A DNA stretch of 64,000 nt, from contig NC_043001.1 of the NCBI RefSeq assembly GCF_006345805.1, forward strand, positions 35,340,001 to 35,404,000. Direction: 5' to 3'. Position numbers and translations under genes: made by a program. Shown here one piece after another: positions 533 to 58,162 of this stretch (its first letter is position 1; each line of letters opens with the position of its first letter). Origin of the DNA: Octopus sinensis. Taxonomy: Eukaryota. The notes beneath the pieces are model-generated. The model searched no databases and had not been told where the DNA came from. It saw nothing but the letters and a program-made list of their open reading frames with translations.

Positions 533-1038
533 CTGTGTTTGTGTGGACGTGTGTGTATGCATGTACTTTTAACAATCAAAATCTAGAAATGAAACACCAA
601 CTGAGGCAACCATATTTTTTCACGCAATTAAGTCATATAGAATAACCTCTTTCTTTAGGTCTTTAGTCTTTCAGAGTTTTATTTGCCGAAATAATTAGGT
701 AATTAAATGCTTTCGTGCATTTGGTGAAACTGAAAGGGGAATAGATCAGTTACCTGTTCTAGTGTGCTATCGTTTGTTTTCAAATAGCATTATCGTCGTC
801 TGAAGAAGAATAATGATAGGAAAGGAGGAAAATTGAGAGAAAATCGGGGGGGGAAGAAATTTAGGGATGAAAGACGAATCAGCTGAGACGGAAGGGTGGC
901 AAATAGAAAGAGTGGACGCTAAAGAATTTTGATAAAAGAAAATTAGTTATCTTAAGGTAACAAGGTAGAATATAATACATAATATTATAGAATATAATAG
1001 AATATAATACATAATATAATACATAATATTACAAAATA

Positions 1039-1237
1039 GGCGGCGAGCTGGCAGAAACGTTAGCGCGCCGGGCGAAATGCTTAGCTGTATTTCGTCTGTC
1101 GTTACGTTCTGAGTTCAAATTCCGCCGGGGTCGACTTTGCCTTTCATCCTCTCGGGGTCGATATAATCGACTTAATCCATTTGTCTGTCCTTGTTTGTCC
1201 CCTCTATGTTTAGCCCCTTGTGGGCAATAAAGAAATA
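1039..1237 (+). mobile_element. SINE-A, tail 1, internally deleted
   Basis: A-box-like GGCGAGCTGGCAGAA, B-box GAGTTCAAATTCC, core GCCTTTCATCC..GGGGTCGAT, tail GTTTAGCCCCTTGTGGGCAATAAAGAAATA. Confidence 0.9.
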
Positions 1238-1299: not shown

Positions 1300-2175
1300 T
1301 GTGGTCTGATCAATTATTATTCGGACTGTTACCAGAGTAACGAAGCTAAGGCACGCAGAGTGAAGACCCTTGGCACAGATTGATCTTGAACTCTGCTGTG
1401 TATGCGCACTAAGTTTTAACGTTCTAGTTCACGTCTTTTGTTTATAGCAGTGCTTGGGAGGAAGATGTGTAGCATGTGATCGTTGCATTGATAATGACAG
1501 AGAAAGTTGAGCAGAGAATCTCCACCGAATGTTGATAAAAGCTTGGCAATACCTGCTCAGAGACCTACGCAAAGTTTTCAAAACATTTTCAGCATTCTCG
1601 GCACATTTAAGGAGGTCTTGTGCCACTGAAACAGCTCAAAGCAGTTTTGGTACAAACTTGGCAGACACAAGTGTCATACCCAAGTCTTTAGTGGTAATGG
1701 ACTGAACTGAACCGTAACTAATTTGCACATCCTCTAATAACACACAGGTAGGGATTCGATGATTTTTTCTCGAAGCTGCACGCACATTTGCGATGTTTTT
1801 CTCATCTTTGCTGGTTGCCGGTCTCACAGAACGTTCATCAATATCAATATCTTTTCGGCCATTTTTGAAACGTCTGAAACACTTATACACTTGTGTTAGC
1901 TCATAAACTCCTCTCCATACACTTTCTGCAACATTGTATAAGCCTCTAAGCAGGCAGCACCGTAACAACTTTCTCTGTCATGGTCAACGTGACGATCACA
2001 CTCTACACACCTTCCTACTAAGCATTGCTGTAAATGGCGAAAGTAAACTAGAACGCTAAAACATTGGGCGCATGCACAACAGATTTCAAAGTCAAATTTT
2101 GTCAAGCGGCTTCGCTCTGCGTGATTTAGCTAAGCTACTATGGTAACAGTCCGAATACTTATTGATCAGACTTCG
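1300..2175. mobile_element. Mariner-derived element made of two inverted 5' ends
   Basis: Terminal repeats TGTGGTCTGATCAATTATTATTCGGACTG (1300) and CAGTCCGAATACTTATTGATCAGACTTCG (2147-2175); arms 1300-1509 and 1966-2175 align in inverted orientation; TA lies to the left. Confidence 0.8.
1575..1960 (-). pseudogene. Mariner transposase N-terminal (HTH) fragment, frameshifted
   Basis: AYTMLQKVYGEE / TQVYKCFRRFKNGRKDIDIDERSVRPATSKDEKNI..ISYGSVQSITTKDLGMTLVSAKFVPKLL / AQDLLKCAENAENVLKT match the mariner N-terminal pattern. Confidence 0.85.
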
Positions 2176-2996: not shown

Positions 2997-4811
2997 GCAG
3001 GATTAGCATCGGTTTCACTAGTTGCTAATGTAGTCTATCTGTCGATTCGATGAAAACCCATGAGAGAAATGTCAGAATTTTTTCGGTGACAGGAGCAGTC
3101 CCACAATGGACTAGTTTGACTCTCTAAAAATTATGTCAATCTATCGCCGTGGAGTTGTTATCATTTTATCGAATCCACACAAATGTAATACAAACTAGAA
3201 CTCCAACAAATATGAAATCACAATGTAGAGAATCGCACCAAACATTCTAACGACGCCACTAATTCATAAACTTCATGTATACATGCTTAATAGGGTTTTC
3301 TGATTTTGGACAACTACAGCAATTTCGAAGGAGGAGAATAGTGGATTAAAGCTACCCCAATGTTTAATTGATATTGATGAAATGTGACGATGAACCTATA
3401 TGTGTGGAAACTGAGTGCAGAACATTCTGAAAATTATAACCACATATACATGAAAACAAACCCTACTAGCTTCAGAGAGAGAATGTTACACCGAGAATGG
3501 ATTCATACAAAGAATTTTGCCTGTATAATAACACGAAGTGAGTGAGGGGATAGTTTTCCTTATAGGCCTGTCCAATCTCAAGATTGACATGCGATTAAAC
3601 AACGACAAAATACAATTCTACATTGTAAACAAGGCGTATTTTTCGTTGAAGTCATTTTATTACATACTAAAACAAAAGTTTACTGAAATCCAGCACACTC
3701 ACACATACGTATAAAATAAACACTGATACACAATGCAGACATCTACAACATATGTGGGAAATTCTGTCTGTGAGTGTGTTTGTGGAGTTGTTAGCATACA
3801 TCGTTATATTGAATTTTATGAAACTTGACACGTGAGTAGAACTCATATTTAGAAATCTCATAGCATACTCCGGTTGTTGAAAAATCGATAATAGGTCCCC
3901 AGGAAGGTATCTTTATATATGACTAATATATTTTCTTTTAACGGCCAAGTGAAATAACCTGTTAGCCCATGGAAAGGATCCGTATATATAACCAGGGGAA
4001 ATAACCCATTCATTTTCCTAAATTATTTGGTAATTGAGTAAGTTTATTTCTTAGCATTTGAACTGTTAGAGTTATTTTCGCATTTTATCCAGTATAACCC
4101 TTAAACAAGTAAATAGTTTTTTCCTAAACAATAGATCCACGTATTCCGGTTAGTGACTTATTCATGAATATACCAACTCTAGCGCCACTGAAGGTAATAT
4201 TCTTTGGGAACGCACAAAATCCCTTTTCAGAGTTATTTACTTTGAATTGTTATTATCTCATATATGATTAGCCTGTTATTACGTAACATGCTTTACGATT
4301 TTTGTATACATATCTTATCAGTATTTCCTCCTAAGTTCTATATACTCTGGGAATGCATTAAAGCCCTTTTCGGGGTTGCTTTATTTGAATTCTTACAATC
4401 GTGTAACAAATTTCATGCTTTTACAGAACTGTCTTCATTAATTTGGGTATTCATAACTTATTGGAAATTCATGAAAACAAGATTCTGTGTAAGACAGTTC
4501 GGTATTCTCTGTAAACGCACAAGAGCTCTTTTAAGGGCTACATATTTGATATTGTTGTTATTGGATTCGCGAAACAATTATGAGAAGGGAACCAAGGGAG
4601 ATAAGCGCCGCTTTTCCGGGAATTACCGGGTACGTCAGCCAGTACACACATGTGGCCCATGTAAGTACTTGTATGTGTGTGCTTCAGTGCATGCATGTGC
4701 ATATGAAATATCTAAACGTGTGTGCATATACATGCATATATATGAATACGTATACATACATACACACACAGGTATATATGTATGTGTGAATATATATGTA
4801 TATATAGTATA

Positions 4812-10214: not shown

Positions 10215-10261
10215 TATATATATTATATATAATATATTATATATATATATTATATATATAT

Positions 10262-10298
<37 letters not shown>

Positions 10299-11148
10299 CA
10301 TGCACACACTACACATATACACACATAGATGTACGCACACGCACACACAGACACAGACACACACGTATATATAAATTTCCATTTATCAACGAAACAAGGA
10401 CTCAAATCTTAGCTATCTTCGTAATTCGGAGACAGGAAATTCGTTCACAAAACTTGTAGTTTTAAACCAATGTAAGTATATTCCAAACTTCAGCATTAGA
10501 GAAAATTTTAAAGCACGAACTAGTAGATACTGTCTGATACCAAAAACCCCCACCTTCAAAATCTCCAGCAAAATCACCGTATGGGACCAGTCTGATGTTT
10601 AGGCGTATTCAAATTGTCACAACGTACTTGAAGGATTCGGAAATACAAAATAAACCTGTACTGAAACATTAAAAAGGACAAACTATAAAATCCTAATGAC
10701 GATTGCGGCCCAGCAAACACTGCAAGGGTACACACCGACTATAAAGCAACAGCGAAATGGATAGAAAATAAATTAAGTCGGGACTCCAGCATAGCCAAGG
10801 ATAAAATGAACTATACAGATGAGCTGAAATAATTGGGTATTTGATTAAAGGTTTCCTAAACTTTCTCTTCGTTCTTTTTTTACCGGTGACAGTGGGAGGG
10901 TTTTGTACTCAGAAGACATTCAGCTGTGAAAGCTTCTACATATTTTTAACACAAAAATATTTTACCAGTTCACAACACTGGCCATATGGTTCTTTTATAA
11001 GCCTCACAAAGTTGAAAGGCGTATTTCATCTAGGTGTGGCTTTAAAATCATTAACAAGAGACCCAGACCCAACGTAAAGGTTGGATAAAAATTTTAACAT
11101 TAGCACACACACCCCCATCCACCCACACATATATATCTTGCGGGGATT

Positions 11149-15377: not shown

Positions 15378-16243
15378 ATGGCAAGAATAAATGGCAAGAA
15401 ATGCCCCTTCATGGTAAATACTGCACTAAACTAAACGCAAAAGAAATAGACAAAGAAAAATCCCAGCAATGGTTGAGAAGCTCAGGACTCAAAGCAGAAA
15501 CAGAGGGATTTTTAATTGCAGCACAAGACCAAAGCCTCCCCACCAGAAATTACCAAAAACATGTAATGAAAAGAAATATTACAAGTAACTGCAGAATATG
15601 TGGAGATGGACAAGAAACAATAAATCATATTATCTCTAGCTGCCCAGTCCTGGCTAAGAAGGAATATATTCACAGACATGACAGAGTTGGAACCTACATA
15701 CATTGGAAGCTATGCCAACATTATGGAATAACAACAGAAAAAAGATGGTATAGGCACACACCAGAAAAGGTCACAGAAAACGAGAAAACAACCATACTCT
15801 GGGATATGCCGATACACACAGATAGAGAAATTAAGGCCAACAGACCAGATATAGTTGTCAGAGATCATGAAGAAAAAAAATGCTTTCTAATTGATGTATC
15901 AATACCGGCAGATGACAACGTGTCTCCAAAAGAAATGGAGAAACTCTCAAAATACAAAGACCTGGAAATAGAGGTAACTAGAATGTGGAATCTGAAAACA
16001 GAAACAATTCCTATCATAGTAGGTGCATTAGGCATGATAAAAAAATATTCAGACAAATACATAACAAAAACACCAGGACTTACAAACACATATAAATTGC
16101 ACTACTAGGCACTGCACACATCCTACGCAGAACACTTTCCATACAATAACCATCAGAGCATCACAACAAATCACAGCACATACCCAAGGCACACAGAGCT
16201 GCGCTCGGTAGTGAAGTGAAAGCACGCTATAAAAATAAAACTA

Positions 16244-16246
<3 letters not shown>
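15378..16246 (+). mobile_element. 5'-truncated R4/Dong-clade non-LTR retrotransposon
   Basis: Encodes the LINE C-terminus (next feature), then a ~100-nt 3' UTR running into (AAT)n; (AAT)n also lies upstream. Confidence 0.9.
15401..16149 (+). pseudogene. C-terminal zinc knuckle and restriction-like (PD-D/ExK) endonuclease of an R4/Dong ORF
   Basis: LHGKY, CRICGDGQETINHIISSC (CCHC), RHD, RPDIVV..LIDVSIP, KYKDL, IIVGALG. A small deletion near 16093 shifts the frame; the expected end IALLGTAHILRRTLSIQ* continues to TAA at 16149. Confidence 0.9.
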
Positions 16247-16284
<38 letters not shown>

Positions 16285-16299
16285 TAATAATAATAATAA

Positions 16300-16389
<90 letters not shown>

Positions 16390-16412
16390 AAGAAGAAGAA
16401 GAAGAAGAAGAA
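16247..16412. repeat. (AAT)n(GAA)n compound microsatellite; related (TAA)n/(CAA)n tracts at 14337-14426, 14606-14646, 15209-15377
   Basis: Visible directly. Confidence 0.97.
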
Positions 16413-16776
16413 TAGTAACAGTAATAAACCAGATAATATAGATCTTTATACAAGTAATAAAGTAGAATGTGAAGAGTTACAACGCCTTTGATCATAGGTT
16501 TGCGAGATACAGCTGCCCTATATCTAAACATTATCCACAGCAGGAGCAACTACAGCAACAACCAAAACAAGAACATGCTGACGTTGGGACAGTAAGATGT
16601 ATTCAGGGTAAATGATCAGTTTCATGATTATATATTTCTGAGTAAATAAACAGCAGTTAATTTCCTTGCAGAACTTGGATTTATACTATGATAAAAGGGG
16701 CTCAAATTGTGGTCGAGGTTCATTCACAGCTTGGTTATCTGAAACGGCGCTTCATAAATATGTGTATTTATACTAT

Positions 16777-17190
16777 TTTACTCTTTTACTCTTTTACTTG
16801 TTTCAGTCATTTGACTGCGGCCATGCTTGAGCACCGCCATTAGTCGAGCTAATCGACCCCGGGACTTATTCTTTGTAAGCCCAGTACTTATTCTATCGGT
16901 CTCTTTTGCCGAACCGCTAAGTGACGGGGACGTAAACACACCAGCATCGGTTGTCAAGCAATGCTAGGGGGACAAACACAGACACACAAACATACACACA
17001 CACATATATATATATATACATATATACGACAGGCTTCTTTCAGTTTCCGTCTACCAAATCCACTCACAAGGCATTGGTCGGCCCGGGGCTATAGCAGAAG
17101 ACACTTGCCCAAGATGCCACGCAGTGGGACTGAACCCGGAACCATGTGGTTGGTTAGCAAGCTACTTACCACACAGCCACTCCTGCGCCT
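16777..17190 (-). mobile_element. SINE-B, full length
   Basis: On the minus strand: head AGGCGCAGGAGTGGCTGTGTGGTAAG..CCGGGTTCAGTCCCAC, TTGGGCAAG motif, internal (TA)n(TG)n, tail (GTAAAAGA)n. Confidence 0.95.
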
Positions 17191-17360
17191 AATAATATAT
17201 ATATATATATATTGTTAGTGGATGTACAATAAATTATATGACGGTCATACATATCAACAGAACTACTAATAACAACAGCAACACCACTTTATTACTATAC
17301 TACCATCGTCTGCATCAACAACAACACAAAGCATATTTTTACCAAACGACTACTACATAT

Positions 17361-17764
17361 AGGCACAGGAGTGGCTGTGTGGTAAATAGCTTGCTTACCA
17401 ACCGCATGGTTCCGGGTTCAGTCCCACTGCGTATCACCTTGGGCAAGTGTCTTCTACTATAGCCTCGGGCTGACCAAAGCCTTGTGAGTAGATATGCTAG
17501 ACGGAAACTGAAAGAAGCCCGTCGTATATATGTATATGTATATATATGTGTGTTTGCGTATCTGTGTTTGTCCCCCCAACATTGCTTGACAACAAATGGT
17601 GGCGTGTTTACGTCCTCGTAACATAGCGGTTCGGCAAAGAGGCCTATAGAATAAGTACTAGGCTTACAAATAATAAGTCCTGAGGTCGATTTGCTCGAGT
17701 AAAGGAGGTGCTCCAGCATGGCCGCATTCAAATGATTGTAACAAGTAAAAGAGTAAAAAGAGTA
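17361..17764 (+). mobile_element. SINE-B, full length
   Basis: Same layout on the plus strand, head-to-head with the previous copy. Confidence 0.95.
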
Positions 17765-20043
17765 TATCGCCACAAATATCATTATCTTAAACACCATTAG
17801 AACCACAATCTCCTCCCTCCAACATCATCACCAACATCACTTGTACTCTCGCTATGAAGAATATTAACATCATAAACACTATTATCACAACAGTTACCGC
17901 CAGCATGTATCAACACTATAAGTGCCATCGTCACCAACGTTACCACCATCATTACTCCATCTCCATCGCTAGCATTTCTTACTATTTCTGTTATTATGGT
18001 TGTCTACATCATTGGTATTGTTCCATCTTTTTTCCACCCATCTATCTCCCTCTTTACCCTCTTCCCCTTCTTCGTTGCTTTCTGATATAAATGAAATGAC
18101 TGCAACAAACTGGGAACCACAACAGAACTTTTATAACAGTCCAGTATGGTGTTAATTAATGATAGAAAAAAAATTACTGCATCATCAATAACAAAACAAA
18201 ATCTTATTAACAGCCGCATCATTCAAGAAATAAATTGAACATTTAGCACCATAACTAACTACCACCATGAGGGAAAAACAACGAAGACAATAGCAACAAC
18301 AACAATGCAAAATAAGACATTATGATTAAGCGCAACAGCCACAATAAAAATCAACTAACGTAAGAAATAATATCAATAACAATAGATAGAAGAGAAACAA
18401 GAACAACTGAAGAATAAATGTAGAAATGCAAGAAATAACTTAATGGTTCGTAAATCAATTATTCTTCATTTCTTGGCAAAATCTAACGAAGGCTTTTTAT
18501 GAAAATTTCTTAAAATACACTCGAGACATTAAAATACGGTGAGATAACACAAGACAGACAATAGGTTATTCATCTGATCAGAACTTTACCTAACCACCTC
18601 CGGCAAAATATACAAAATTATCTCAGTCAATTGTTATAGAAAAACCTATGTAATTACAATTATAACTGGGTTTTTGTGTTTGTGTTCTCTTTAAAAGTAA
18701 GTTCTACTCAGTAGCCTTGTATTTAATGGCGAATAAAACATTCTGGTTAAATCGTGCTAAAATACTCTAACCTATATAGCGTGGTATATCAGTTGTGTAC
18801 AAAGTACAAAATGTTAAGTATTGTACGTGGTACATTTAAAGGGGAATAAAGGGGATTAAATGTATGGAAAGTGTTGAAGTTTCAGTTAATATTATTTATG
18901 TAGTAAGCATGTCATTCATGAAATAATATAGTTTTTGTAACTCCTTCGTCTAAGTTCCCCTTTTGTCTCCTTCTTCGGCTCCACCAGAACCTACAGATAT
19001 ATGCAATCGACCAATGAGAAATCATATATATTGTGGATCGATCTGATTAAAGTAACAATCAAATTTCTTTAAAACTACACCCTATCATCTACAAAAAAGA
19101 ACGAAGTATTTGATAATGTAGTCCTAGATATGAAAAAAAGAGAACATAGTAATGCATGAAACGTTTATCTTGTGTCTTCCTGGTCAGGGTCGAGTTAAGA
19201 CTAAAGAAAAACACTTTCGGTTTACACAATAATTATATCAAAAGCGACAACACAGTAGAGAAATGTAATAACACTTACCATGGAATTCTGCATGTAGGAG
19301 TGAACAGTCCATCATCAAATAAACGGAAACCCATTCTGTCTGTGTACCAGGTTTGCTTGCTTTGTTTGATTCTTCGATGACATTCCAACGCGCACGCCCT
19401 AAACAGACTAAGTGACTGGTGCTAGATAACAAGGACAATGCAACAACTTTGAGACTATAATGGATAATTTCGATGTCCTTTTGATTTTGATTTAGGAGGT
19501 TGATAGAAGGGCGATTATGTCCATTCCAAGATGTTACATATTCCTTACAATCATATTAACTGAATTCTAGCGTCTGAAATAGCTTCAGTGCATGCATATA
19601 AGTTTGAGTGTTCATCACTTTCTTTTGGTAAACGGCCAAATACACTACACTGCATCTGTCTTCGAAACATATTTGATTTTTCTTTCTCGTACACATTAGA
19701 GCAATTGCTCTGCTATCATTTCGTCATGTGACATGTGGTACCTCGTGCACCTGTACAAGTAATGTCGATTTTGAGTGGGAATCAGTTTAAGTGAGCACAA
19801 ACGTTTCATCACAATCAACAAAACATCGCTGTACGGTAACAAAAGAAGTTGCAGAACCCTTATGCGTCGTCTAACGACAGGAGACTCCACAATATGTATG
19901 TGTGTATGTATGTATGTATGTATGTATGTATGTATGTATGTATGTATGTATGTATGTATGTATGCATGTATGTATGCATGTATGTATATATATATGTATA
20001 TATATATGTATATATATATATATGTATATATATATATGTATAT

Positions 20044-23769: not shown

Positions 23770-24300
23770 TCCCCGGGAATTGGTGTGCAGGCACACCGTA
23801 CACGTACAGTGCAGGTAACAACAGAATAAACAAGAGTTTATCAGGGACCAATGCAGATAATTGGAAAATGGAGAAAACCTCAGAGTAACAAACACATCGA
23901 TTGGACCACATTTGTCGCATATATTATAATACAACGCATAACATATTGCATTAAGAAAAAAAGCTATAAATATGGTCTAGTCGATGTGTTTGCTAAACTG
24001 AGGTTTTCTCCACTTTCTAATTATTTGTATTATATATGTACAACAAGAAATAATATTTGTCTCTTCTAATTGAAACAAATGGCTTTATAGGACAGCAAAA
24101 GAAGTGCTCAAATATAAGTGAGACGAAGATAAAGGAGCATATGATTAAATGTTTGAGGGATGGTGTTGTATGTAAAGTCGTTGGCCCAAATTTAATGTTT
24201 AAACTGTTTTCCACCTGCCTTCGTCTTTTGTTTATTTTCATAAAGCTTCCCGTTATATATATATATATATCAAGAAGTTTTCAAAAAAAAAAAAAGCAAA

Positions 24301-24472
24301 GGGCGCAGCAGTGGTTGTGTGGTAAGTAGCTTGCTTACCAACGAAATGTCTCCGGGTTCATTCCCAGCACGTGGAACTTTGGGAAAGTATTCTCTACTGT
24401 AGCCTCGGCTCGACCAAAGCTTTGTGAGTGGATTTGGTAGACGCAAACTGAAAGAAGCCCGTCGTATATATG

Positions 24473-24539
<67 letters not shown>

Positions 24540-24752
24540 TTGTGTGTCTCTGTTTGTCCCCCAACATCGCTTGACAACCGATGCTGGTGTGTTTACGTCT
24601 CCGTAATTTAGCGGTTCGGCAAGAGAGACCGATAGAAAAAGTACTAGGCTTACAAAGAATAAGTCCTGCGGTCGATTTGGTCGACTAACTAAAGGCGGTG
24701 CTCCAGCATGGACGCAGTGAAATGACTGAAACAAGTAAAAGAGAAAAAGAGT
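24301..24752 (+). mobile_element. SINE-B, full length
   Basis: Head, TTGGGAAAG variant, internal (TA)n(TG)n, GTAAAAGAG tail. Confidence 0.93.
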
Positions 24753-28139: not shown

Positions 28140-28499
28140 GTTCTTTTATAGGACTTAGAAAAAGGCGGCGAGCTGGCAGAAACTTTAGCACGCTGGGTGA
28201 AATGCGTAGCCGTATTTCGTCTGCCGTTACGTTCTGAGTTCAAATTCCGCCGAGGTCGACTTTGCCTTTCATCCTTTCGGGGTCGATATAATCGACTTAA
28301 TCCCTTTGTCTGTCCTTGCTTGTCCCCTCTGCGTTTAGCCCCTTGTGGGTAGTAAAGAAATATATAGGACTTAGAAAAGCTGATGGTCCGCTGCAATAAG
28401 TATGTGTGAATCAGAAAGGGGAGTATGTTGAATAAAATCATAACTGCTCCTCCTGTATTTTCTTTTAGCCAAACCGAGGAGCTTTTCAGCACACCCTCG
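28140..28499 (+). mobile_element. Mariner 3' end relic interrupted by a SINE-A
   Basis: With the SINE removed it reads DLEKLMVRCNKYV / NQKGEYVE* (mariner C-terminus pattern), then CTTTTCAGCACACCCTCG. Confidence 0.7.
28163..28362 (+). mobile_element. SINE-A, tail 1, with 16-bp TSD
   Basis: TATAGGACTTAGAAAA at 28147-28162 and 28363-28378. Confidence 0.95.
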
Positions 28500-33488: not shown

Positions 33489-33824
33489 TACACACACACA
33501 CATACACAACACACACACACATTTGCTTGCATGTCTGTTTGTGTACCTGCATATTTATGCGAATATAAGTATTCCTATAAATACACACATACAAATTTTA
33601 TACTTGTATATATAAATATACACCGTTTAAGAGAATGGACACTCTTCCTATTTTGTTTTAATCCCTGAAGATTAGCCATTTTGGCAAAACAACACATGAT
33701 AAAATATATATTTTTCAATATTGAGAAAGAAACAAAAAGTAACAGAAAATATGCAGATTTGATTCTTACTTCTACGTGAATAAACGAAACAGAAAATATT
33801 ATCTTAAAATATATTTCGTCAAAC

Positions 33825-34257
33825 AAGGCAGCGAGCTGGCAGAAACGTTAGGATGCCGGACGAAATGCTTAGCGGTAATTCGTCTGTCATTATGTTCTAA
33901 GTTCAAATTTTGCCGAAGTCGACTTTACCTTTCATCCTTCCGGGTCGATTAAATAAGTAGCAGTTACTCACTGGTGTCGATATAATCGATTTAATCCGTT
34001 TATCTGTCCTCGTTTGTCCTCTGTGTGTGTAGCTACTTGTGTGAAGTAAAGAAATAAGAAACGTTAGGGCGCCGGGTGAAATGCTTAGCAGTATTTCTTC
34101 TGTCTTTGTGCTCTGAGTTCAAATTCCGCCGAGATCGACTTTGCATTTCATCCTTTCGGGGTTGATAAATTAAGTACTAGTTGCGTTTTGGGGTCGATCT
34201 AATCGACTGGTTTTCTCCTCAAACATTTCGGACCTTGTGCTTAGATTAGAAAAGAAT
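33825..34257 (+). mobile_element. SINE-A dimer: tail-1 copy 33825-34056 fused to a 5'-truncated tail-2 copy
   Basis: Junction AAAGAAATA|AGAAACGTTAG; degenerate 17-bp flanking repeat (33808-33824 versus 34255-34271, 14/17). Confidence 0.9.
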
Positions 34258-35000
34258 ATAGTTTATCAAACGTTGCAGAAAAATGACTCGATTCTTCAAT
34301 AGGAGCAAGGGTTTTGTTTTAAAGGCATATCAAATCTGATCTACAAGAGCTGTTCCCAATAGCATCCCAATCCTGATCATTGCCTATTTACCATTGTGGT
34401 GTCCACCAAACTACACTAGCCAAAATTTTCCTTCCTTTCGCTGTGGAGAATTTATATACCATGGTTATAACAAAGGTGATGTGTGTTTGATTCTTTCTAT
34501 GAGCTTTCTCACCGATCTCTTTCATTAGCGTAATAGATTTCATATTTATGTCACATCGAATAGATTTCATATTTATGTCATGACGAGAAAGGGAAATGAT
34601 AATTCAACAATTATATAGCAACCGTTTAATTGTTTTACATTGTAAATCGAGGGTGATAATCCATTTCCATACCACAAGTACGACCGCATCCGTGACGTTT
34701 TTACATAGATTTGATTACCTCATTTTGAAGACGATACCTCGCGTTTTCAGTGGTTAACGTATATTTTGTTCATTTTTTAATAAAATGCAAACGATTAAAA
34801 TATTTCAGCATTTTACCTAATATCCGCGTGTTATTCTTGTAGTTGATGCGCTTTAACAATACGCAAAATACTAATCAAATCCATGTATATACAATACTAT
34901 TCCAGCCAGAATATTTTGTGTCTCCTTTCAGCAGGCTACGTCTTCAGCGAACTACTTTTTATCATTTATTCATGTTGGAAAGAATAGGATGAAATATATG

Positions 35001-35332
35001 TGCGCAACTGGTACTTATTTCATTGACTCCGAAAAGATGAAAGCCAAATTCGAACCTCGGTTGAATTTGAAAACAGAACGTAAATATATACTAAATGCCT
35101 ATTTCTTTACTACCCACAAGGGGCTAAACACAGAGGGGACAAACAAGGACAGATAGACGGTTTAAGTCGATTACAAAGACCCCAGTGCGTAACTGGTACT
35201 TAGTTTATCGACTCCGAAAGGATGAAAGGCAAAGTCGACCTCGGTGGAATTTGAACTCAGAACGTAACGGCAGACTAAATACGGCTACGCATTTCGCCCG
35301 GCGTGCTAACGTTTCTGCCAGCTCGCCGCCTT
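35001..35332 (-). mobile_element. Young SINE-A (35100-35332) abutting the body of an older SINE-A (35001-35099)
   Basis: Minus-strand junction AAAGAAATA|GGCATTT..TACGTTCTG. Confidence 0.88.
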
Positions 35333-35356
35333 TCAATAATAATAATAGGAATAAAA

Positions 35357-36851: not shown

Positions 36852-37277
36852 CACGTATGCCTGTATCTAAGTATGTTTGTTTATGCGTGTGTAGGTTTGT
36901 GTATGAAGATGCACTTAAGTTCCATCAAATATATCTCAATCTTAATGTCTTAGTACCGGAATTGAAACCAAAATTATTGTAAGGAGTCAGCATACACTCG
37001 TCCTTAGAGAATTAAGCAGTGCAACGTCTCTACTTTATGTGTTTGTGTGTGTGTGTCTCGGGGGAGGGGGCGCTCTGAATCTGTTGGTGTAACTATGTAT
37101 CTAGTTATGTATTAATCTAGTTCTCTCATTATATCAGTCGCTTCATGTGTCTGCGCAGTCCCTCGATCTCTTTCATTGTGTATATGTATACATGTATATA
37201 TAAATATAAATAAAATCATACGTACATGTCTATATATTTACACACAGACACACACTCGCACACACATATATATATGT

Positions 37278-37335
<58 letters not shown>

Positions 37336-37358
37336 GTATACATATGCATGTATATATA

Positions 37359-37389
<31 letters not shown>

Positions 37390-37397
37390 ATATATAT

Positions 37398-37555
37398 GAG
37401 TGGCTGTGTGGTAAGTAGCTTGCTTACGAACCACATGGTCCCGGGTTCAGTCCCACTGCGTGGCACCTTGGGCAAGTGTCTTCTACTATAGCCTTGGGCC
37501 GACCAAAGCCCTGTGAGTGGATTTGGTAGACGGAAACTGAAAGACGCCCGTCGTA

Positions 37556-37616
<61 letters not shown>

Positions 37617-37975
37617 TTGTGTATCTGTGTTTGTCCCCCCCAACACCGCTTGACAACCGGTGCTGGTGTGTTTGCGTCTCCGTAACTTAGCGGTTCGGCA
37701 AAAGAGACCGATAGAATTAGTACTAGGCTTACAAAGAATAAGTCCTGGGGTCGATTTGCTCGACTAAAAAAGAAGCAGTGCTCCAGAATGGCCACAGTCA
37801 AATGACTGAAACAAGTAAGAGAGTAAAAGAGTACATACATATACGACGTTTCTTTTGATTTCCATCTACCAAATCCTTACAAGGTGCTTTGGGCGGCCCG
37901 AGGCCATTGTAGAACACTATTGATCAAGGTGCCTCGTAGTGGGACTGAACCTGAAATCATGTGGTTTGGAAGCAG
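37398..37975. mobile_element. SINE-B full length (+, 37398-37832), tail-to-tail with a degenerate SINE-B 5' half (-, 37840-37975)
   Basis: Standard SINE-B motifs. Confidence 0.88.
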
Positions 37976-44856: not shown

Positions 44857-45614
44857 GCGAGGTAACCTATTGATGAACCACCAAGCGGCAACACTACTGA
44901 TCATATACCAATAATAAATTTTACTCCCCTTTGTACTGAGCTTTCTCTTCTTTTATTCATTTAAATTGGCCATAAAGGCCTTACAAAGAAAGGAATCTGC
45001 TGGCTGGACACAGACATAATGAGATGAAATGATAGACGATATGATAATAATGAGGGCAACAGCAACGCCAGCCGATTGCTGTTTACCCGAGCACATTGTT
45101 CTTTATAAGTACCATATTTGAGGCAACAAACCTCTTACATAACAAAACATCAAGGAGGCAAAAAAAAACCTTAAATTTTTACAACACAAAAAGCCATTGT
45201 GAGGCAATAAACCTCTTACGCAAGTCAATCATAAATCAATGAAACAATACAATTGAGGCACCAAGCCTCTTACTTTAATTAATTACAAATCTTTCTACCC
45301 GACCAGATTTCTCGCCTCAGTTAAACATCTGGATGGCGCCAAGTCGGGCCACTTTAGCATAAATCTGAAGGTATCCTTGAGGAAGGAGTTCATTATCCTG
45401 AACAGGTCGTTCTCCCCCATGACCTTCTCAGCCACCTGCGAAGGCCAGTCGGGTCCTCCGTGCAGGACAGAATCCCTTCCCTTCGGCCCTTCGTTTTAAG
45501 CTTCATAACAAGCTTTCTATTCTTGCTTATTCTAATTTAAAATACGTGATATTTTAACAAGCAAATAGATCGAACAGCTGAGCAACAGCAGGGGTAATAA
45601 GCTCAGTAAATACA

Positions 45615-45890
45615 AGGCGACGAGCTGGCAGAATCGTTAGCACGCCGGGCGAAATGCTTACCAGTATTTCTCTGCTGCTACGTTCTGAGTTCAAATTCCG
45701 CCGAGGTCGACTTTGCTTTTCATCCTTTCGGAGTCGATTAAATAAGTACCAGTTACGCACTGGAGTCGATATAATCGACTTAATCCGTTTGTCTGTCCTT
45801 GTCTGTTACGCACTGGGCTCGATATAATCGACGTTTGTCTGCCCTTGTTTGTCCTCTCTGTGTGTAGCCCCTTGTGGGTAGTAAAGAAAT
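45615..45890 (+). mobile_element. SINE-A, tail 1, with 20-bp TSD and an internal ~50-bp duplication
   Basis: TAATAAGCTCAGTAAATACA at 45595-45614 and 45890-45909; TTACGCACTGG..TCGATATAATCGAC occurs twice. Confidence 0.95.
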
Positions 45891-46409
45891 AATAAGCTCA
45901 GTAAATACATCAGATACCACAAGAAATATTCCAATATGAAAATACCATAAAGAATTGAGATTGTATGAAACAAAGGCATACAAACAACTGAATAACTAAA
46001 TACGTAAACAAAGACATCTTTAAATAATACAAAAGGGATTGTTTTAAACGATATATTAACACTAATAGTGTATAATTTTAAAACCCCACTAAAACTGAAA
46101 TTGTTTTCCTTAACAGCAAACAATACGTGTGTAATTACCATTGTGATTTATAAATTCGATTACAAGCGGCAAGTTGTAAACTTGATAACTCTAACAGTTA
46201 TATTAGTAAATGAAGTATACCGTTTTGTAAATGTAGTGCACTTCACTAAACAATACAAAATAAATGCAGATAGGAAAGCAGCAGTGAACAATATAACTAC
46301 AGACTATAGAATTCCTCACAAAAATAGACGACTAATGATGCCACGATTACGCGGGATAATGCACAATATGGTAATAATAAACCCAATGAATATGCGTAAA
46401 AAAATTATA

Positions 46410-54705: not shown

Positions 54706-54746
54706 TATATATAATCTGAGTCCATGTATATCACTCAACCAATACC

Positions 54747-54975
54747 TATTTCTTTATTACTCACAAGGACTAAACACAGAGGGGACAAACAAGGACAGAC
54801 ATAGGTATTAAGTCGATTACATCGACCCCAGTGCGTAACTGGTACTTAATTTATCGACCCCGAAAGGATGAAAGGCAAAGTCGACCTCGGCGGAATTTGA
54901 ACTCACAACGTAACGCAGACGAAATACCGCTAAGCATTTCGCCCGGTATGCTAACGTTTCTGCCAGCTCGCCGCC
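54747..54975 (-). mobile_element. SINE-A, tail 1, full length
   Basis: Complete head, core and tail; the 3' end abuts GGTATT on the minus strand. Confidence 0.95.
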
Positions 54976-55325
54976 ATTTACGTTAATATTCCATTATAAT
55001 TCATTTCTAGTTTAATGGTTTACTGAGAATTTAGGATGTTTACATATTCTTGGTGTCTTCTTTTCGTCTCGGTTCCACTCTTCCTTTCTCTCTTTTAATT
55101 TCTATTATTAATAATCAAAAATATAATGATGTCCTCGCACATAGGTGCGTGAAGACCATCTTTGATTAACTGATTGCCTATCACCTCTACTTCGCCCTTC
55201 AAGGAGATTATACAGGTCCCGTGAACTTTCACATAGGTGTCCCACCTCTACTTTAAATTTAACTATCATAACTGTCGTCACGTCAAACTCCTATGGACCT
55301 TTATGATAGGCCTTTATGATATTTC

Positions 55326-55462: not shown

Positions 55463-55521
55463 TTTGCAAACAAGGATACGATAACAACGCAACAACACTG
55501 CAAAAATTACTAATATGATAA

Positions 55522-55959
55522 TACTTTCAAACAAGGCCTGAAATTTGGGGAAAGCGGTTAATCGAATACAACTGGTACTTATTTCCTCAATCACGAAAGA
55601 AATGGAAGGCAATGTTGACTTCAGCAGAATTTCAAATCGGAACGTTTAGGCGAAATACCTATTTCTTTATTACCCACAAGGGGCTAAACACAGAGGGGAC
55701 AAACAAGGACAGACATAGGTATTAAGTCGATTACATCGACCCCAGTGCGTAACTGGTACTTTAATTTATCGACCCGGAAAGGATGAAAGGCAAAGTCGAC
55801 CTCGGCGGAATTTGAACTCAGAACGTAACGGCAGACGCAATACCGCAAAGCATTTCGCCCGGCGTGCTAACGTTTCTGCCAGCTCGCCGCCTTTATTTAG
55901 GCGAAATACCACAACGCATTTTCTCCGGCGTGCCAACGAGTCTGTCAGTTCACCGCCTT
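55522..55959 (-). mobile_element. Nested SINE-A: young tail-1 copy (55660-55895) inside an older copy
   Basis: 15-bp TSD TTTAGGCGAAATACC at 55645-55659 and 55896-55910; the older head lies at 55911-55959 and the older body and tail at 55522-55644. Confidence 0.92.
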
Positions 55960-55977
55960 GATTGCTAATACAATAGT

Positions 55978-56450: not shown

Positions 56451-56618
56451 CCCTCGTTCATAAAAAATAATTTCATTCTTTTATCACCAACTGTTTGAGA
56501 AGACACACATACACACACAAACACAAAGACGAACATACATGCACAGGATAACTACTATTATAATAATACCATCGACTCTCACTTTCCGTCATTTTCAATA
56601 GCGCTTATTTGATTTTGA

Positions 56619-57180
56619 AAGACGGCGAGCTGGCGTTCAGAGTTCAAATTCCGCCGAGGTTGACTTTACTTTTCATCCTTTCGAGGTCGATAAATTTAGT
56701 ACCAGTTGCGTACTGGGGTCGATCTAATCGACTGGCCCCCTCCCACCCAAATTTCGGGCATTGTGCTTAGAGTAGAAAAGAATATTTCAAGGTGCGAGAT
56801 AGCAGAAACGTTAGCACGCCGGGCGAAATGCTTAGCGGTATTTCGTCTGCCGGTACGTTCTGAGTTCAAATTCCGCCGAGGTCGACTTTGCCTTTCATCC
56901 TTTCGGGGTCGAAAAAATAAGTACCAGTTACGCACTGGAGTCGATATATTCGAATTAATCCGTTTGTCTGTCCTTGTTTGACCTCTCTGTTTAGCTCCTT
57001 GTGAGTAGTAAAGAAATAGAAATAGGTATTTCGTCTGTCTTTACTTTCTGAGTTCAATTTCCGCCGAGGTCGACTTTGCCTTTCGGGTTCGATAAATTTA
57101 GTACTAGGTGCATTGTAAGTTCATCTGATCGACTAATCCACTCCCCTAAAATTTTGGGCCTTGTGCTTAGAGTAGAAAAG
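56619..57180 (+). mobile_element. SINE-A head-to-tail run: tail 2 (56619-56783), tail 1 (56789-57024), truncated tail 2 (57025-57180)
   Basis: Junction AAAGAAATAGAAATA|GGTATTTCGTCTG. Confidence 0.92.
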
Positions 57181-57306
57181 TTTATTTGCTTTTTTACTTT
57201 CTTTTATTTATTTCTATCTTTCGGTTTAAGTTATTCGCTTACAATTTGTTTTAGCGTTCGTTCATTGTTTTGTTCAGTTAGCAATACCAAGTTCGACTAG
57301 GTTTAC

Positions 57307-57883
57307 GAGCTGGCAGAAACGTTAGCACGCTGGGCGAAATGCGTGGCCGTATTTCGTCTGCCGTTACGTTCTGAGTTCAAATTCCGCAGAGTTCGACTTT
57401 GCCTTTCATCCTTTCGAGGTCAATTAAGTAAGTACCAGTTACGCACTAGGGTCGATATAATCGACTTAATCCGTTTGTCTGTCCTTGTTTGTTCCCTCTG
57501 TGTTTAGCCCCTTGTGGGCAGTAAAGAAATAGGTATATCGTCTGCCGCTACGTTATGAGTTCAAATTCCGCCGAGGTCGACTTTGCCTTTTATCCTTTCG
57601 GGGTCGATTAAATAAGTATCAGTTACTCACTGGAGTTGATATAATCGACTTATCCGTTTGTCTGTCCTTGTTTGTCCTCTCTGTGTTCAGCCCCTTGTGG
57701 GTAGTACAGAAATAGGTATTGCGTCTGCCGTTACGTTCTTGGTTGAAATTTCGCCGAGGTCAACTTTGCCTTTCACCCTCGTGGGGTCGATTACGCACTG
57801 GGGTCCATGTAATGAACTTAATCCGTTTGTCTGTCCTTGATTGTCCCCTTTAAGCTTAGCCCCCTGTGGGCAATAAAGAAATA
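57307..57883 (+). mobile_element. SINE-A trimer, all tail 1 (monomers start 57307, 57532, 57715)
   Basis: Internal junctions GAAATA|GGTAT; 14-bp direct repeat TACCAAGTTCGACT at 57285-57298 and 57886-57899. Confidence 0.93.
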
Positions 57884-58162
57884 ACTACCAAGTTCGACTC
57901 ATTGCCAGCTCTGAAGACATTATGCATAGCGGTGTCATTTGAGCATGATTTCCGAATATAATCCTGTCAGCTGAACTTCATGCTATCGACATTCAGGCAG
58001 AGATACTAAGATCTCATTAATTAAACAGAACTGACACATGAAGTCGAAATGATATTTTTTCTTTATCTCTTTTCATCTTCAGTAAATAGCTAATCGCTCT
58101 ATTAAACGTAGTTTACTCTTATAGAAATTGTATCGTGTGGTACATATTGTTTTAAGTAAAAA

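What the first reader, a model, noticed from the sequence alone, without database searches (positions are those of the whole stretch)
55522..55959. Self-targeting SINE: insertions recur at GGTATTTCG in the SINE's own tRNA-like head
On the minus strand an old head (..GCGTTGT-GGTATTTCGCCTAAA) is followed by a complete young tail-1 copy, then GGTATTTCGCCTAAA again and the rest of the old element. This is a nested insertion with a 15-bp TSD starting at GGTATT. The same 3' junction, GAAATA|GGYAT, appears at 35099/35100, 57024/57025, 57531/57532 and 57714/57715, and at 54746/54747 where the flank is non-SINE DNA that also begins GGTATT. That is 6 of the 13 tail-1 ends I counted. Possible mechanisms (inference): a partner LINE endonuclease prefers this motif, or the nicked strand (..GAAATACC-3') anneals to GGUAUUUC in the SINE RNA or its read-through and primes there. 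Either would let the SINE use its own family as a safe landing pad and build arrays. I do not know whether this has been described for this family.
Basis: partly seen in the sequence, partly recalled or inferred. Interest (0 to 1): 0.75.

Follow-up and report, generated by a model that had tools for sequence, protein, structure and literature searches.

The report
Octopus SINE inserts into its own head
A short mobile element of an octopus genome repeatedly ends exactly at position 52 of older copies of its own family; this builds head-less tandem arrays, a non-poly(A) counterpart of the known Alu-into-Alu insertion hot spot, and not a new kind of system.

Summary
All six GAAATA|GGYAT junctions exist (6 found, 0.07 expected by chance). 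They are 6 of the 13 tail-1 ends in the window. The copy at 55660-55895(-) is a true nested insertion with an exact 15-bp target-site duplication (TSD).

I added 40 kb of Octopus vulgaris DNA. Across all 104 kb, 7 of 20 tail-1 ends abut SINE position 52, all in sense orientation.

- Only 1 of the 7 junctions has the nested-plus-TSD signature.
- The others are arrays of a full copy followed by units covering 52-235, with no old head upstream.
- Two arrays (the trimer at 57299-57883 and a dimer in L003) are each flanked as a whole by a single TSD pair.
- The downstream unit is always the more diverged (6 of 6 comparisons; 4.5% against 13.6%). This rules out tandem duplication, one dimeric master and simultaneous template jumping. 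It fits younger copies entering older residents at C51|G52.
- That site is the boundary between loop and stem of a conserved 13-bp hairpin.

Two questions stay open: how the resident head is lost (in-register homologous joining or read-through retrotransposition), and why this site is chosen (nick motif AGC|RGTAT or pairing of a read-through trailer). The partner LINE was not found. A second recurrent junction lies at position 19.

The parts
55896..55962 (-). Head (positions 1-66) of an old resident SINE of tail-2 type. Its last 15 nt (55896-55910) are the upstream TSD copy GGTATTTCGCCTAAA.
55660..55895 (-). Young, complete tail-1 SINE (236 nt) nested in the old copy. Body divergence is 2%, against 25% for the host.
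55515..55659 (-). Rest of the old resident SINE, from position 52 to its tail-2 end. The first 15 nt (55645-55659) are the downstream TSD copy.
54747..54980 (-). Tail-1 SINE, the closest relative of the copy at 55660-55895 (they share ATACCTATG). It is followed by GGTATTG (54740-54746) and then non-SINE DNA. No TSD was found.
35100..35335 (-). Complete tail-1 SINE (body divergence 4%), the upstream unit of a position-52 junction. No old head lies upstream.
35000..35099 (-). Older SINE fragment covering positions 52 to about 150 (divergence 15%), directly after the tail at 35100.
56618..56786 (+). Copy A: a tail-2a SINE with an internal deletion of positions 19-71. Its tail abuts the head of copy B.
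56787..57024 (+). Copy B: a tail-1 SINE whose tail ends GAAATAGAAATA. Seven of its first 17 alignment columns (about the first 18 nt) differ from the consensus and the next 50 nt show no differences, which may mark a hybrid head.
57025..57187 (+). Copy C: an older tail-2a SINE running from position 52 to its end (divergence 14%), directly after B's tail.
57285..57298 (+). Upstream copy of the 14-bp TSD TACCAAGTTCGACT that encloses the whole trimer.
57299..57531 (+). Unit X of the trimer: a near full-length tail-1 SINE (non-CpG divergence 2.7%). It has C at position 52.
57532..57714 (+). Unit Y of the trimer, covering positions 52-235 (non-CpG divergence 6.1%).
57715..57883 (+). Unit Z of the trimer, covering positions 52-235 with a 16-nt deletion (non-CpG divergence 9.6%).
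57886..57899 (+). Downstream copy of the TSD TACCAAGTTCGACT, after a 2-nt filler (AC).
33823..34259 (+). Dimer with the second recurrent junction: a tail-1 copy (33823-34056) followed directly by a tail-2a copy that starts at position 19 (34057-34259). The two units are equally diverged. A probable TSD of about 14 bp encloses both.

Best explanation
**What it is.** The window is octopus DNA (Octopus vulgaris or a close relative) full of a tRNA-type SINE of about 235 nt. Copies that carry the 3' end '...CCCCTTGTGGGTAGTAAAGAAATA' (tail-1) have a sense-orientation insertion hot spot inside older copies of the same SINE. The hot spot lies between C51 and G52. That is the 3' edge of the UAGC loop of a conserved 13-bp hairpin (35-47 paired with 52-64).

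**Steps shown.**
- Target-primed reverse transcription (TPRT) from a nick at 51|52 gives 'new tail | GGTATTTCG...old'.
- In one case the old head and a 15-bp TSD are kept.
- The downstream unit is always the older one.

**Steps inferred.**
- When the resident copy is still similar to the incoming copy, the 5' end of the new cDNA is joined in register to the resident's homologous head. Only positions 52-235 are then duplicated. The original TSD pair ends up enclosing a head-less tandem array: full copy, 52-235, 52-235.
- When the resident is badly decayed, joining is non-homologous and the classical nested structure results.
- The site is chosen because it is the SINE's best match to a loose nick or primer preference, about AGC|RGTAT, and G52 is needed.
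For: **Position and excess.**
- 6 junctions in the window against 0.07 expected.
- 7 of 20 tail-1 ends in 104 kb, from two unlinked loci, all in sense orientation.
- About 35 such sites in 104 kb would give roughly 0.003 hits under random integration.

**Independent insertion.** An exact 15-bp TSD carries the host's private variants.

**Age polarity.**
- Upstream units show 30/672 differences, downstream units 83/611 (Fisher p = 1e-8). The polarity holds in 6 of 6 pairs.
- It also holds at non-CpG sites: X 2.7%, Y 6.1%, Z 9.6%; B 4.8% against C 15.5%.
- Downstream units belong to different subfamilies or tail types and share no private changes.

**Other support.**
- No solitary copy starts at position 52, whereas truncated copies start at about 37, 40, 44 and 69.
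- No tail-2 end abuts position 52 (0 of about 14).
- Arrays are enclosed by one TSD pair: TACCAAGTTCGACT, and AGATAAT[G/A]ACAGTAATCAA.
- Mismatches cluster at the 5' end of the heads of B and X, which fits hybrid heads (14/98 against 13/335, p = 6e-4).
- A 5'-truncated copy is joined through GTAG microhomology (L003 6422).
- The hairpin is supported by U.G / G-C / U-A covariation at pair 47-52.
- All 7 junctions have G52, against 61% G in uninterrupted heads.
- A solitary copy has a TSD starting CAGCC|AGTATAT.
Against: - Only 1 of 7 junctions has the nested-plus-TSD signature.
- Copy 35100-35335 and unit X carry C at position 52 and otherwise young heads, so their heads are not simply the resident's head. 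Heteroduplex segregation would have to be invoked.
- The trimer's TSD is perfect (14/14). That is more likely if the array went in as a unit at the age of X (P about 0.47) than if the TSD is as old as Z (P about 0.07).
- SINE heads are about 2.2 times more diverged than bodies in solitary copies too, which weakens the hybrid-head signal.
- The nick motif rests on about 10 sites and was noticed after the fact. Other AT-rich sites in the SINE body are never used.
- A second hot spot (position 19) has an unrelated sequence.
- The sample is 104 kb. Five junctions lie in one 3.2-kb nest, and locus L003 was reached through an ORF inside a SINE.
- The partner LINE was not found.
Confidence: 0.45

Rival explanations
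1. **Read-through (trailer) model.** The SINE has no Pol III terminator, so a copy nested at position 52 is transcribed into the host's 52-to-end part. This has two consequences. (a) Reverse transcription can start at the host's own tail, which retrotransposes [new copy][52-235] as one unit with one TSD pair. (b) The trailer GGUAUUUCG... can pair with the nicked strand of any genomic SINE head and set the start of reverse transcription at the tail/trailer boundary. Target-specific LINEs of the R1Bm type (and, from my own knowledge, R2) do something similar with read-through target sequence. The junction would then propagate itself, and only a few founder events would need to hit 51|52.
For: - The consensus has no TTTT. 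The first T4 after tail-1 ends lies 16-341 nt downstream.
- Arrays are enclosed by single, well-kept TSDs. The likelihood ratio is about 9 for TSDs being as young as the newest unit.
- Downstream units are older, as expected if they came from the master's flank.
- G52 is invariant (7 of 7), as expected if the primer's 3' end must pair with the trailer.
- Copy 54747-54980 carries GGTATTG and then non-SINE DNA with no TSD, like a 7-nt 3' transduction. Its closest relative is the nested copy 700 bp away.
- Two more junction classes involve the same family on both sides: position 19 in this SINE, and an internal site of a CORE-like SINE.
- Precedent: R1Bm needs downstream target sequence in its RNA for accurate initiation, and SART1 can prime from short target-like stretches (PMC7265360).
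Against: - In the one testable nested case the TSD is 12-15 bp and starts at position 52, so the nick was within about 3 nt of 51|52. A guide-only model allows any nick under the trailer.
- Upstream units at position-52 junctions belong to several subfamilies (GCTTAGCGG and GCGTAGCCG types, and different tails), so there is no single heritable lineage.
- Every array in the sample has a different pair of units, so many separate masters would be needed.
- The old-looking first 10-18 nt of B and X are left unexplained.
Confidence: 0.3
2. **Template switching in a single event.** Reverse transcription starts on one SINE RNA, stops at position 52 (the hairpin, or a cleaved or modified tRNA-like RNA), and jumps to the 3' end of another tail-1 RNA. 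One integration then yields an array with one TSD pair, as with U6/L1 chimeras and the end-to-end jumping of the R2 reverse transcriptase.
For: - Single TSD pairs enclose arrays whose units come from different subfamilies.
- The junction lies at a loop/stem boundary of a conserved RNA hairpin.
- The position-19 dimers have equally diverged units (10% and 11%; 7% and 5%), so this model may well apply to them.
- Tail-to-head adjacency of tail-2 copies suggests end-to-end jumps.
Against: - The model cannot produce the nested case with the host head and a 15-bp TSD.
- It predicts units of equal age, but downstream units are older in 6 of 6 pairs (p = 1e-8).
- It predicts solitary copies truncated at position 52, and none is seen.
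- The cDNA end (..ACC-3') has no microhomology with the acceptor end (..AUA-3').
Confidence: 0.1
3. **DNA-level origin.** The junction is part of one longer or dimeric consensus, or the arrays arose by local tandem duplication or unequal crossing-over, with no repeated insertion.
For: - Tandem Repeats Finder reports a 183-bp period array at 57349-57793.
- Five of the six window junctions lie within 3.2 kb.
Against: - Units within an array differ by subfamily markers and share no private mutations.
- Downstream units include tail-2a and three tail-1 subfamilies.
- There is a clear age gradient.
- One junction has its own TSD.
- The same junction occurs at an unlinked locus.
Confidence: 0.04

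Closest known systems
[quoted passage not shown] 2010, PMC2836564)
   Same: A SINE inserts into older copies of its own family at essentially one nucleotide position. Insertion is mostly in sense orientation, at a site that is not the canonical endonuclease motif. The flank downstream of the insert continues the target's consensus.
   Different: The Alu hot spot is explained by the poly(A) tail pairing with the linker's poly(T), which uses up the TSD. Here the tail is not poly(A), and no tail-like stretch lies on the primer strand next to the site. The one clean event has a full 15-bp TSD. Most events leave head-less partial-unit arrays, which the sections of the Alu paper I read do not describe.
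Read-through target sequence guiding initiation in target-specific LINEs (R1Bm: Anzai et al. 2005, cited in PMC7265360, which also covers SART1Bm; R2: from my own knowledge)
   Same: RNA downstream of the element's 3' end, or short target-like stretches in the RNA, pair with the nicked target and fix where reverse transcription starts. The trailer model here needs the same thing.
   Different: Those are autonomous LINEs with sequence-specific endonucleases aimed at rDNA or telomeres. Here the element is a Pol III SINE, the 'target' is its own family, and only about a third of insertions go there. Pairing was not shown here.
SINE-derived satellites of squamate reptiles (Vassetzky et al. 2023, PMC10702118)
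   Same: Tandem arrays whose unit is a fixed part of a SINE occur at many loci.
   Different: Those arrays have four or more rather homogeneous monomers, and the authors suggest unequal homologous recombination for the initial duplication. Here arrays hold 2-3 units that include the SINE's 3' end, come from different subfamilies, and are older towards the 3' side.
[quoted passage not shown]
   Same: A full-length RNA copy is fused upstream of a 5'-truncated one, and one TSD pair encloses both.
   Different: Such chimeras have variable breakpoints and parts of equal age. Here the breakpoint is fixed and the parts differ in age. The position-19 dimers may be of this kind.

Membership tests
tRNA-type SINE mobilised by a LINE through a shared 3' tail | Short, non-coding, many dispersed copies with variable TSDs | tested here: met
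   35 hits in 64 kb. TSDs of 13-21 bp with different sequences flank 8 insertions. All six frames of the consensus contain stop codons.
tRNA-type SINE mobilised by a LINE through a shared 3' tail | tRNA-derived head with internal Pol III A and B boxes | tested here: inconclusive
   Box-like strings are present: TGGCAGAAACG (15-25) and GAGTTCAAATTCC (77-89), read directly from the sequence. ARAGORN finds no tRNA and Rfam finds nothing.
tRNA-type SINE mobilised by a LINE through a shared 3' tail | 3' tail shared with a partner LINE | not testable with these tools
   No LINE in the 104 kb held ends in tail-1. The LINE fragments present end in (AAT)n, (ATT)n or (ATG)n. No further same-species DNA could be fetched.
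Self-insertion hot spot of the Alu type | Insertions of a family into itself concentrate at one position, in sense orientation | tested here: met
   7 of 20 tail-1 ends are followed by position 52, all in sense orientation. None lies at any other body position except 2 at position 19.
Self-insertion hot spot of the Alu type | Each event is an independent nested insertion, with the host continuing on both sides | tested here: inconclusive
   This holds for 1 of 7 junctions (55660-55895). The other 6 lack the host's head.
Self-insertion hot spot of the Alu type | The hot spot is explained by a tail-complementary stretch on the primer strand next to an endonuclease site | tested here: not met
   The primer strand ends ..CGAAATACC-3', which cannot pair with ..AAAGAAAUA-3'. 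The only complementarity (GAAAUA with TATTTC at 54-59) is to the other strand. This is read directly from the sequence.
Dimeric or composite SINE family (one master dimer) | The same pair of units recurs at different loci and the units are of equal age | tested here: not met
   Every array has a different pair of units. Downstream units are older in 6 of 6 pairs.
SINE-derived satellite or local tandem duplication | Neighbouring units are each other's closest relatives and share private changes | tested here: not met
   Units X, Y, Z and the two L003 units differ at subfamily markers and share no private substitutions.
Template-switch chimera formed in one integration event | One TSD pair around the whole chimera | tested here: met
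   Seen for the trimer and the L003 dimer, and probably for the dimer at 33823-34259.
Template-switch chimera formed in one integration event | Parts are of the same age | tested here: not met
   Not met for position-52 arrays. Met for the two position-19 dimers.
Strictly site-specific non-LTR element (R1, R2 or Tx1 type) | Nearly all insertions lie at one target sequence | tested here: not met
   10 of 20 tail-1 ends lie in unrelated, mostly AT-rich DNA, with TSDs starting TATA, ATAA, GATA or AGTA.

The most novel reading that the evidence does not exclude
The junction propagates itself by RNA guidance. A tail-1 copy that sits at position 52 of another SINE is transcribed with a trailer that matches about a million genomic SINE heads. 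The trailer pairs with the nicked strand and sets both the target and the exact start of reverse transcription. Each daughter then lands in the same configuration and becomes a new trailer-bearing source. In this way a non-autonomous Pol III element would gain single-nucleotide target specificity for its own family without any sequence-specific endonuclease, and would build arrays as a by-product.
Probability: 0.25. Interest if true: 0.7.

Novelty: new variant of a known kind. Interest (0 to 1): 0.45.

Why it matters
SINEs make up about 11.6% of the Octopus vulgaris genome, and a recent annotation lists some 900 mostly unclassified SINE 'families' (PMC13282606).

**Consequences if the rate holds genome-wide.** If about a third of the copies of one active subfamily end at a fixed position inside older copies, then:
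- many of those 'families' may be composites of this kind;
- counts, ages and family definitions of SINEs would be distorted;
- the same process would be a direct source of short tandem arrays built from a mobile element.

**Mechanistic interest.** This would be a non-poly(A) counterpart of the Alu self-insertion hot spot. It offers a test of how 3' read-through sequence and homology between insert and target shape both ends of a target-primed insertion. Three closely related octopus genomes are available to catch events in progress.

The 'safe landing pad' idea (insertions into junk copies cost the host less) is plausible but was not tested here.

Tried and rejected
**More same-species DNA.**
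- Exact-pattern scans with the tail and with the most conserved core 20-mer found nothing in metagenome, viral and prokaryote-genome collections.
- A search with the LINE ORF at 15401-16108 returned relatives from many phyla, but only contigs of about 1 kb for the close ones.
- A search with the SINE's open sense frame found just two O. vulgaris 'hypothetical proteins'. These gave loci L002 and L003, 20 kb each.
- A search with the ORF of the other abundant repeat gave one Argonauta protein. Its locus lacks this SINE.

**Other dead ends.**
- ARAGORN and Rfam do not recognise the head.
- No paper in the library holds the SINE's sequence strings, and the octopus repeat paper does not mention nesting or arrays of SINEs.
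- TSD searches failed for 54747-54980, for 35000-35335 and for the L003 position-19 dimer.

**Ideas rejected.**
- Pairing of the tail with the primer strand at position 52: there is no complementarity.
- Priming inside GGGUAG of the tail: this would delete the tail end, and that is not seen.
- A DNA cruciform at the hairpin: 4 of the 13 pairs are G.U, which become mismatches in DNA.
- A younger truncated copy added after the tail of an older full copy: the age polarity is the reverse.
- The loose endonuclease preference for TA-rich starts as the only cause: the SINE's more AT-rich sites are never hit.

Full report
**Material.** The window is AT-rich (31-44% GC) and eukaryotic. It has microsatellites and no tRNA genes. 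A BLAST search with the young copy found 35 SINE hits. The SINE's open sense frame matches only two 'hypothetical predicted proteins' of Octopus vulgaris among 5.8 billion proteins. So the source is O. vulgaris or a close relative. Those two proteins gave 2 x 20 kb of O. vulgaris chromosome sequence (L002 and L003). The analysis therefore rests on 104 kb. No other route to same-species DNA worked.

**The element.** Thirteen copies give a 235-nt consensus. It consists of a head, AAAAGGCGGCGAGCTGGCAGAAACGTTAGCACGCCGGGCGAAATGCTTAGC|GGTATTTCG..., then a core, then tail-1...CCCCTTGTGGGTAGTAAAGAAATA. Older copies share the head and core but end in two other related tails (tail-2a and tail-2b). The consensus has no run of four T. 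By the established rule for Pol III termination, transcripts must therefore run into the 3' flank. Positions 35-47 pair with 52-64 around a UAGC loop. Pair 47-52 covaries among subfamilies (U.G 9, G-C 3, U-A 3). The junction site C51|G52 is the 3' edge of that loop.

**Checking the observation.**
- The 15-mer GGTATTTCGCCTAAA is present only at 55896-55910 and 55645-55659.
- The host is heavily decayed (25% body divergence, many CpG transitions) and the insert is young (2%).
- AGAAATAGGYAT occurs six times against 0.07 expected.
- I find 13 tail-1 ends, 6 of them followed by GGYAT.
- With L002 and L003 the count is 7 of 20. The window alone holds about 14 copies of the position-52 motif in SINE context, and I count about 35 such sites in the 104 kb. 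Random integration would hit them about 0.003 times.

**What the other junctions look like.**
- None of the remaining six has the host's head upstream.
- The run 57299-57883 reads [about 3-235][52-235][52-235] (period 183). It is enclosed as a whole by TACCAAGTTCGACT at 57285-57298 and 57886-57899.
- The L003 dimer 10230-10646 is enclosed by AGATAAT[G/A]ACAGTAATCAA.
- Copy B (56787-57024) is followed by a tail-2a copy from position 52.
- Copy 35100-35335 is followed by an old fragment covering 52 to about 150.
- Copy 54747-54980 is followed by GGTATTG and then unrelated DNA, and no TSD can be found. This last case cannot be counted as an independent non-SINE target. The copy is the closest relative of the nested copy 700 bp away. 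The 7 nt may therefore be carried-over 3' flank.

**Order of events.**
- At alignment columns where at least 70% of copies agree, the upstream unit is less diverged than the downstream unit in all six adjacent pairs. The pairs are X-Y, Y-Z, B-C, L003 u1-u2, 35333-35099, and the nested pair.
- Summed, this is 30/672 against 83/611 differences (Fisher p = 1e-8).
- The gradient holds at non-CpG sites (X 2.7%, Y 6.1%, Z 9.6%).
- Downstream units come from three tail-1 subfamilies and from tail-2a, and they share no private changes.
- No solitary copy begins at position 52, although truncated copies begin at about 37, 40, 44 and 69.
- No tail-2 end abuts position 52.

Together these results reject local duplication, a single dimeric master, and a one-step template jump between RNAs of the same age. 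They point to younger tail-1 copies entering older resident copies at C51|G52.

**How the resident's head is lost.** Two routes fit the data, and I could not separate them.

- *In-register joining.* The new cDNA ends in sequence homologous to the resident's head. The 5' junction can therefore form by homology and not by the usual microhomology. A GTAG microhomology junction is seen in L003 6422. The result is one head, a duplicated 52-235 segment, and the resident's own TSD around everything.
  - For: 7 of the first 17 alignment columns of B, and the first 10 nt of X, are strongly diverged while the rest of each head is clean.
  - Against: X and the copy at 35100-35335 carry C at position 52, and the trimer's TSD is perfect.
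- *Read-through.* A nested copy is transcribed into the host's 52-to-end part and reverse-transcribed from the host's tail.
  - For: the TSDs are well kept (likelihood ratio about 9).
  - Against: every array would need its own master, and the odd 5' ends remain unexplained.

**Why this site.**
- The TSDs of ten insertions start TATA, ATAA, GATA, TACC, AGTA or GGTA. This is a loose TA-rich preference. It cannot explain why more AT-rich parts of the SINE are never hit.
- One solitary copy has CAGCC|AGTATATTTTC, close to TTAGC|GGTATTTCG. Three of eight non-SINE sites have AGC within 2 nt upstream of the nick. This is a weak lead, noticed after the fact, towards a motif of about AGC|RGTAT.
- All seven junctions have G at position 52, although only about 61% of uninterrupted heads do (p about 0.03). 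Both a nick motif and a trailer that must pair with the primer's last base would predict this.
- The trailer idea has a precedent. PMC7265360, citing Anzai et al. [quoted passage not shown]
- In the one clean case the TSD has normal length and starts at position 52. The nick itself was therefore within about 3 nt of the site.

[quoted passage not shown] The octopus case shares the self-targeting, the single position and the orientation. It differs in three ways: the tail is not poly(A), no tail-complementary stretch lies beside the site, and most events produce head-less arrays. Squamate SINE-derived satellites (PMC10702118) are longer and homogeneous, and their initial duplication is put down to unequal recombination. 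I therefore file this as a new variant of a known kind.

**Limits.** The sample is small and clustered, and one extra locus was reached through a SINE-derived ORF. The partner LINE is unknown. The family name is not established. Ohshima and Okada (1994) described three octopus SINEs, of which OR1 and OR2 are cited as CORE-SINEs in PMC4824008 and PMC4758252. That this element is the third (OK, a name I recall and did not verify) is only a guess. Every mechanistic step beyond 'younger copy enters older copy at 51|52' is inference.

Noticed in passing
window 34056/34057; L003 5888/5887: A second recurrent junction: the tail-1 end is followed directly by AGAAACGTTAG, which is SINE position 19. Here the two units are equally diverged (10% and 11%; 7% and 5%). 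These dimers may be single-event template jumps, unlike the position-52 arrays.
   Followed up: partly
window 56618-56786 and 56787-57024: Position 18|19 is also the 5' breakpoint of copy A's internal deletion (19-71). It is also the boundary between the old-looking and young-looking parts of copy B's head. A 12-bp T-rich match (TTATTTG[A/C]TTTT, at 56605-56616 and 57182-57193) may enclose A+B+C as one unit.
   Followed up: partly
window 13070->12801, 46420->46614, 56786->56787, 55963->55962: Tail-2 SINE copies often end 0-25 nt before the first base of another full-length SINE. This tail-to-head adjacency could reflect end-to-end template jumping or insertion into AT-rich tails.
   Followed up: no
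SINE positions 35-64, e.g. window 55832-55861(-): A conserved 13-bp hairpin with a UAGC tetraloop lies in the head. The closing pair 47-52 covaries between subfamilies (U.G, G-C, U-A).
   Followed up: yes
window 15401-16400(+): A 235-aa ORF with a zinc knuckle (Pfam zf-RVT). By eye it also has a restriction-like endonuclease motif (RPDIVV...IDVSIP). It is the C-terminus of an R2/R4/Dong-type LINE and is followed by an (AAT)n/(AAG)n 3' end. It is not the partner of tail-1. Relatives occur across echinoderms, corals and crustaceans.
   Followed up: partly
L003 2273-2440(-): A CORE-like SINE body (GGGTTCAGTCCCAC...GAGCAAGTGTCTTTTACTATAGCC) is fused to the last 37 nt of tail-1. An internal part of the same CORE-like family follows directly. 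This is a third junction with the same family on both sides, or a template-switch chimera.
   Followed up: partly
window 1035-1237 and 28159-28362; 45612-45891: Two tail-1 copies share the same 34-nt internal deletion between GGGGTCGAT direct repeats, which suggests a subfamily or a recurrent slip. Another copy has a 46-nt internal duplication.
   Followed up: no
window 17075-17476, 24270-24734, 37230-37840; L003 1822-2184: A very abundant second repeat family, linked to (AC)n/(AT)n microsatellites, keeps open frames of 130-155 aa. It appears inside an annotated O. vulgaris 'hypothetical protein' (P0122), so some annotated octopus proteins derive from repeats.
   Followed up: partly
window 1636-1968(-): The ORF looks like the N-terminal part of a mariner-type transposase, but it had no Pfam hit at E <= 0.01.
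   Followed up: no
L003 3562-4170(-), 17273-18754(+), 18831-19677: RTE-type LINE copies. The first (3562-4170) has a 3' UTR of tandem repeats ending in (ATG)n; a tandem-repeat block follows the second at 18831-19677. A CR1-like fragment (16110-16868) ends in (ATT)n. None carries tail-1.
   Followed up: partly
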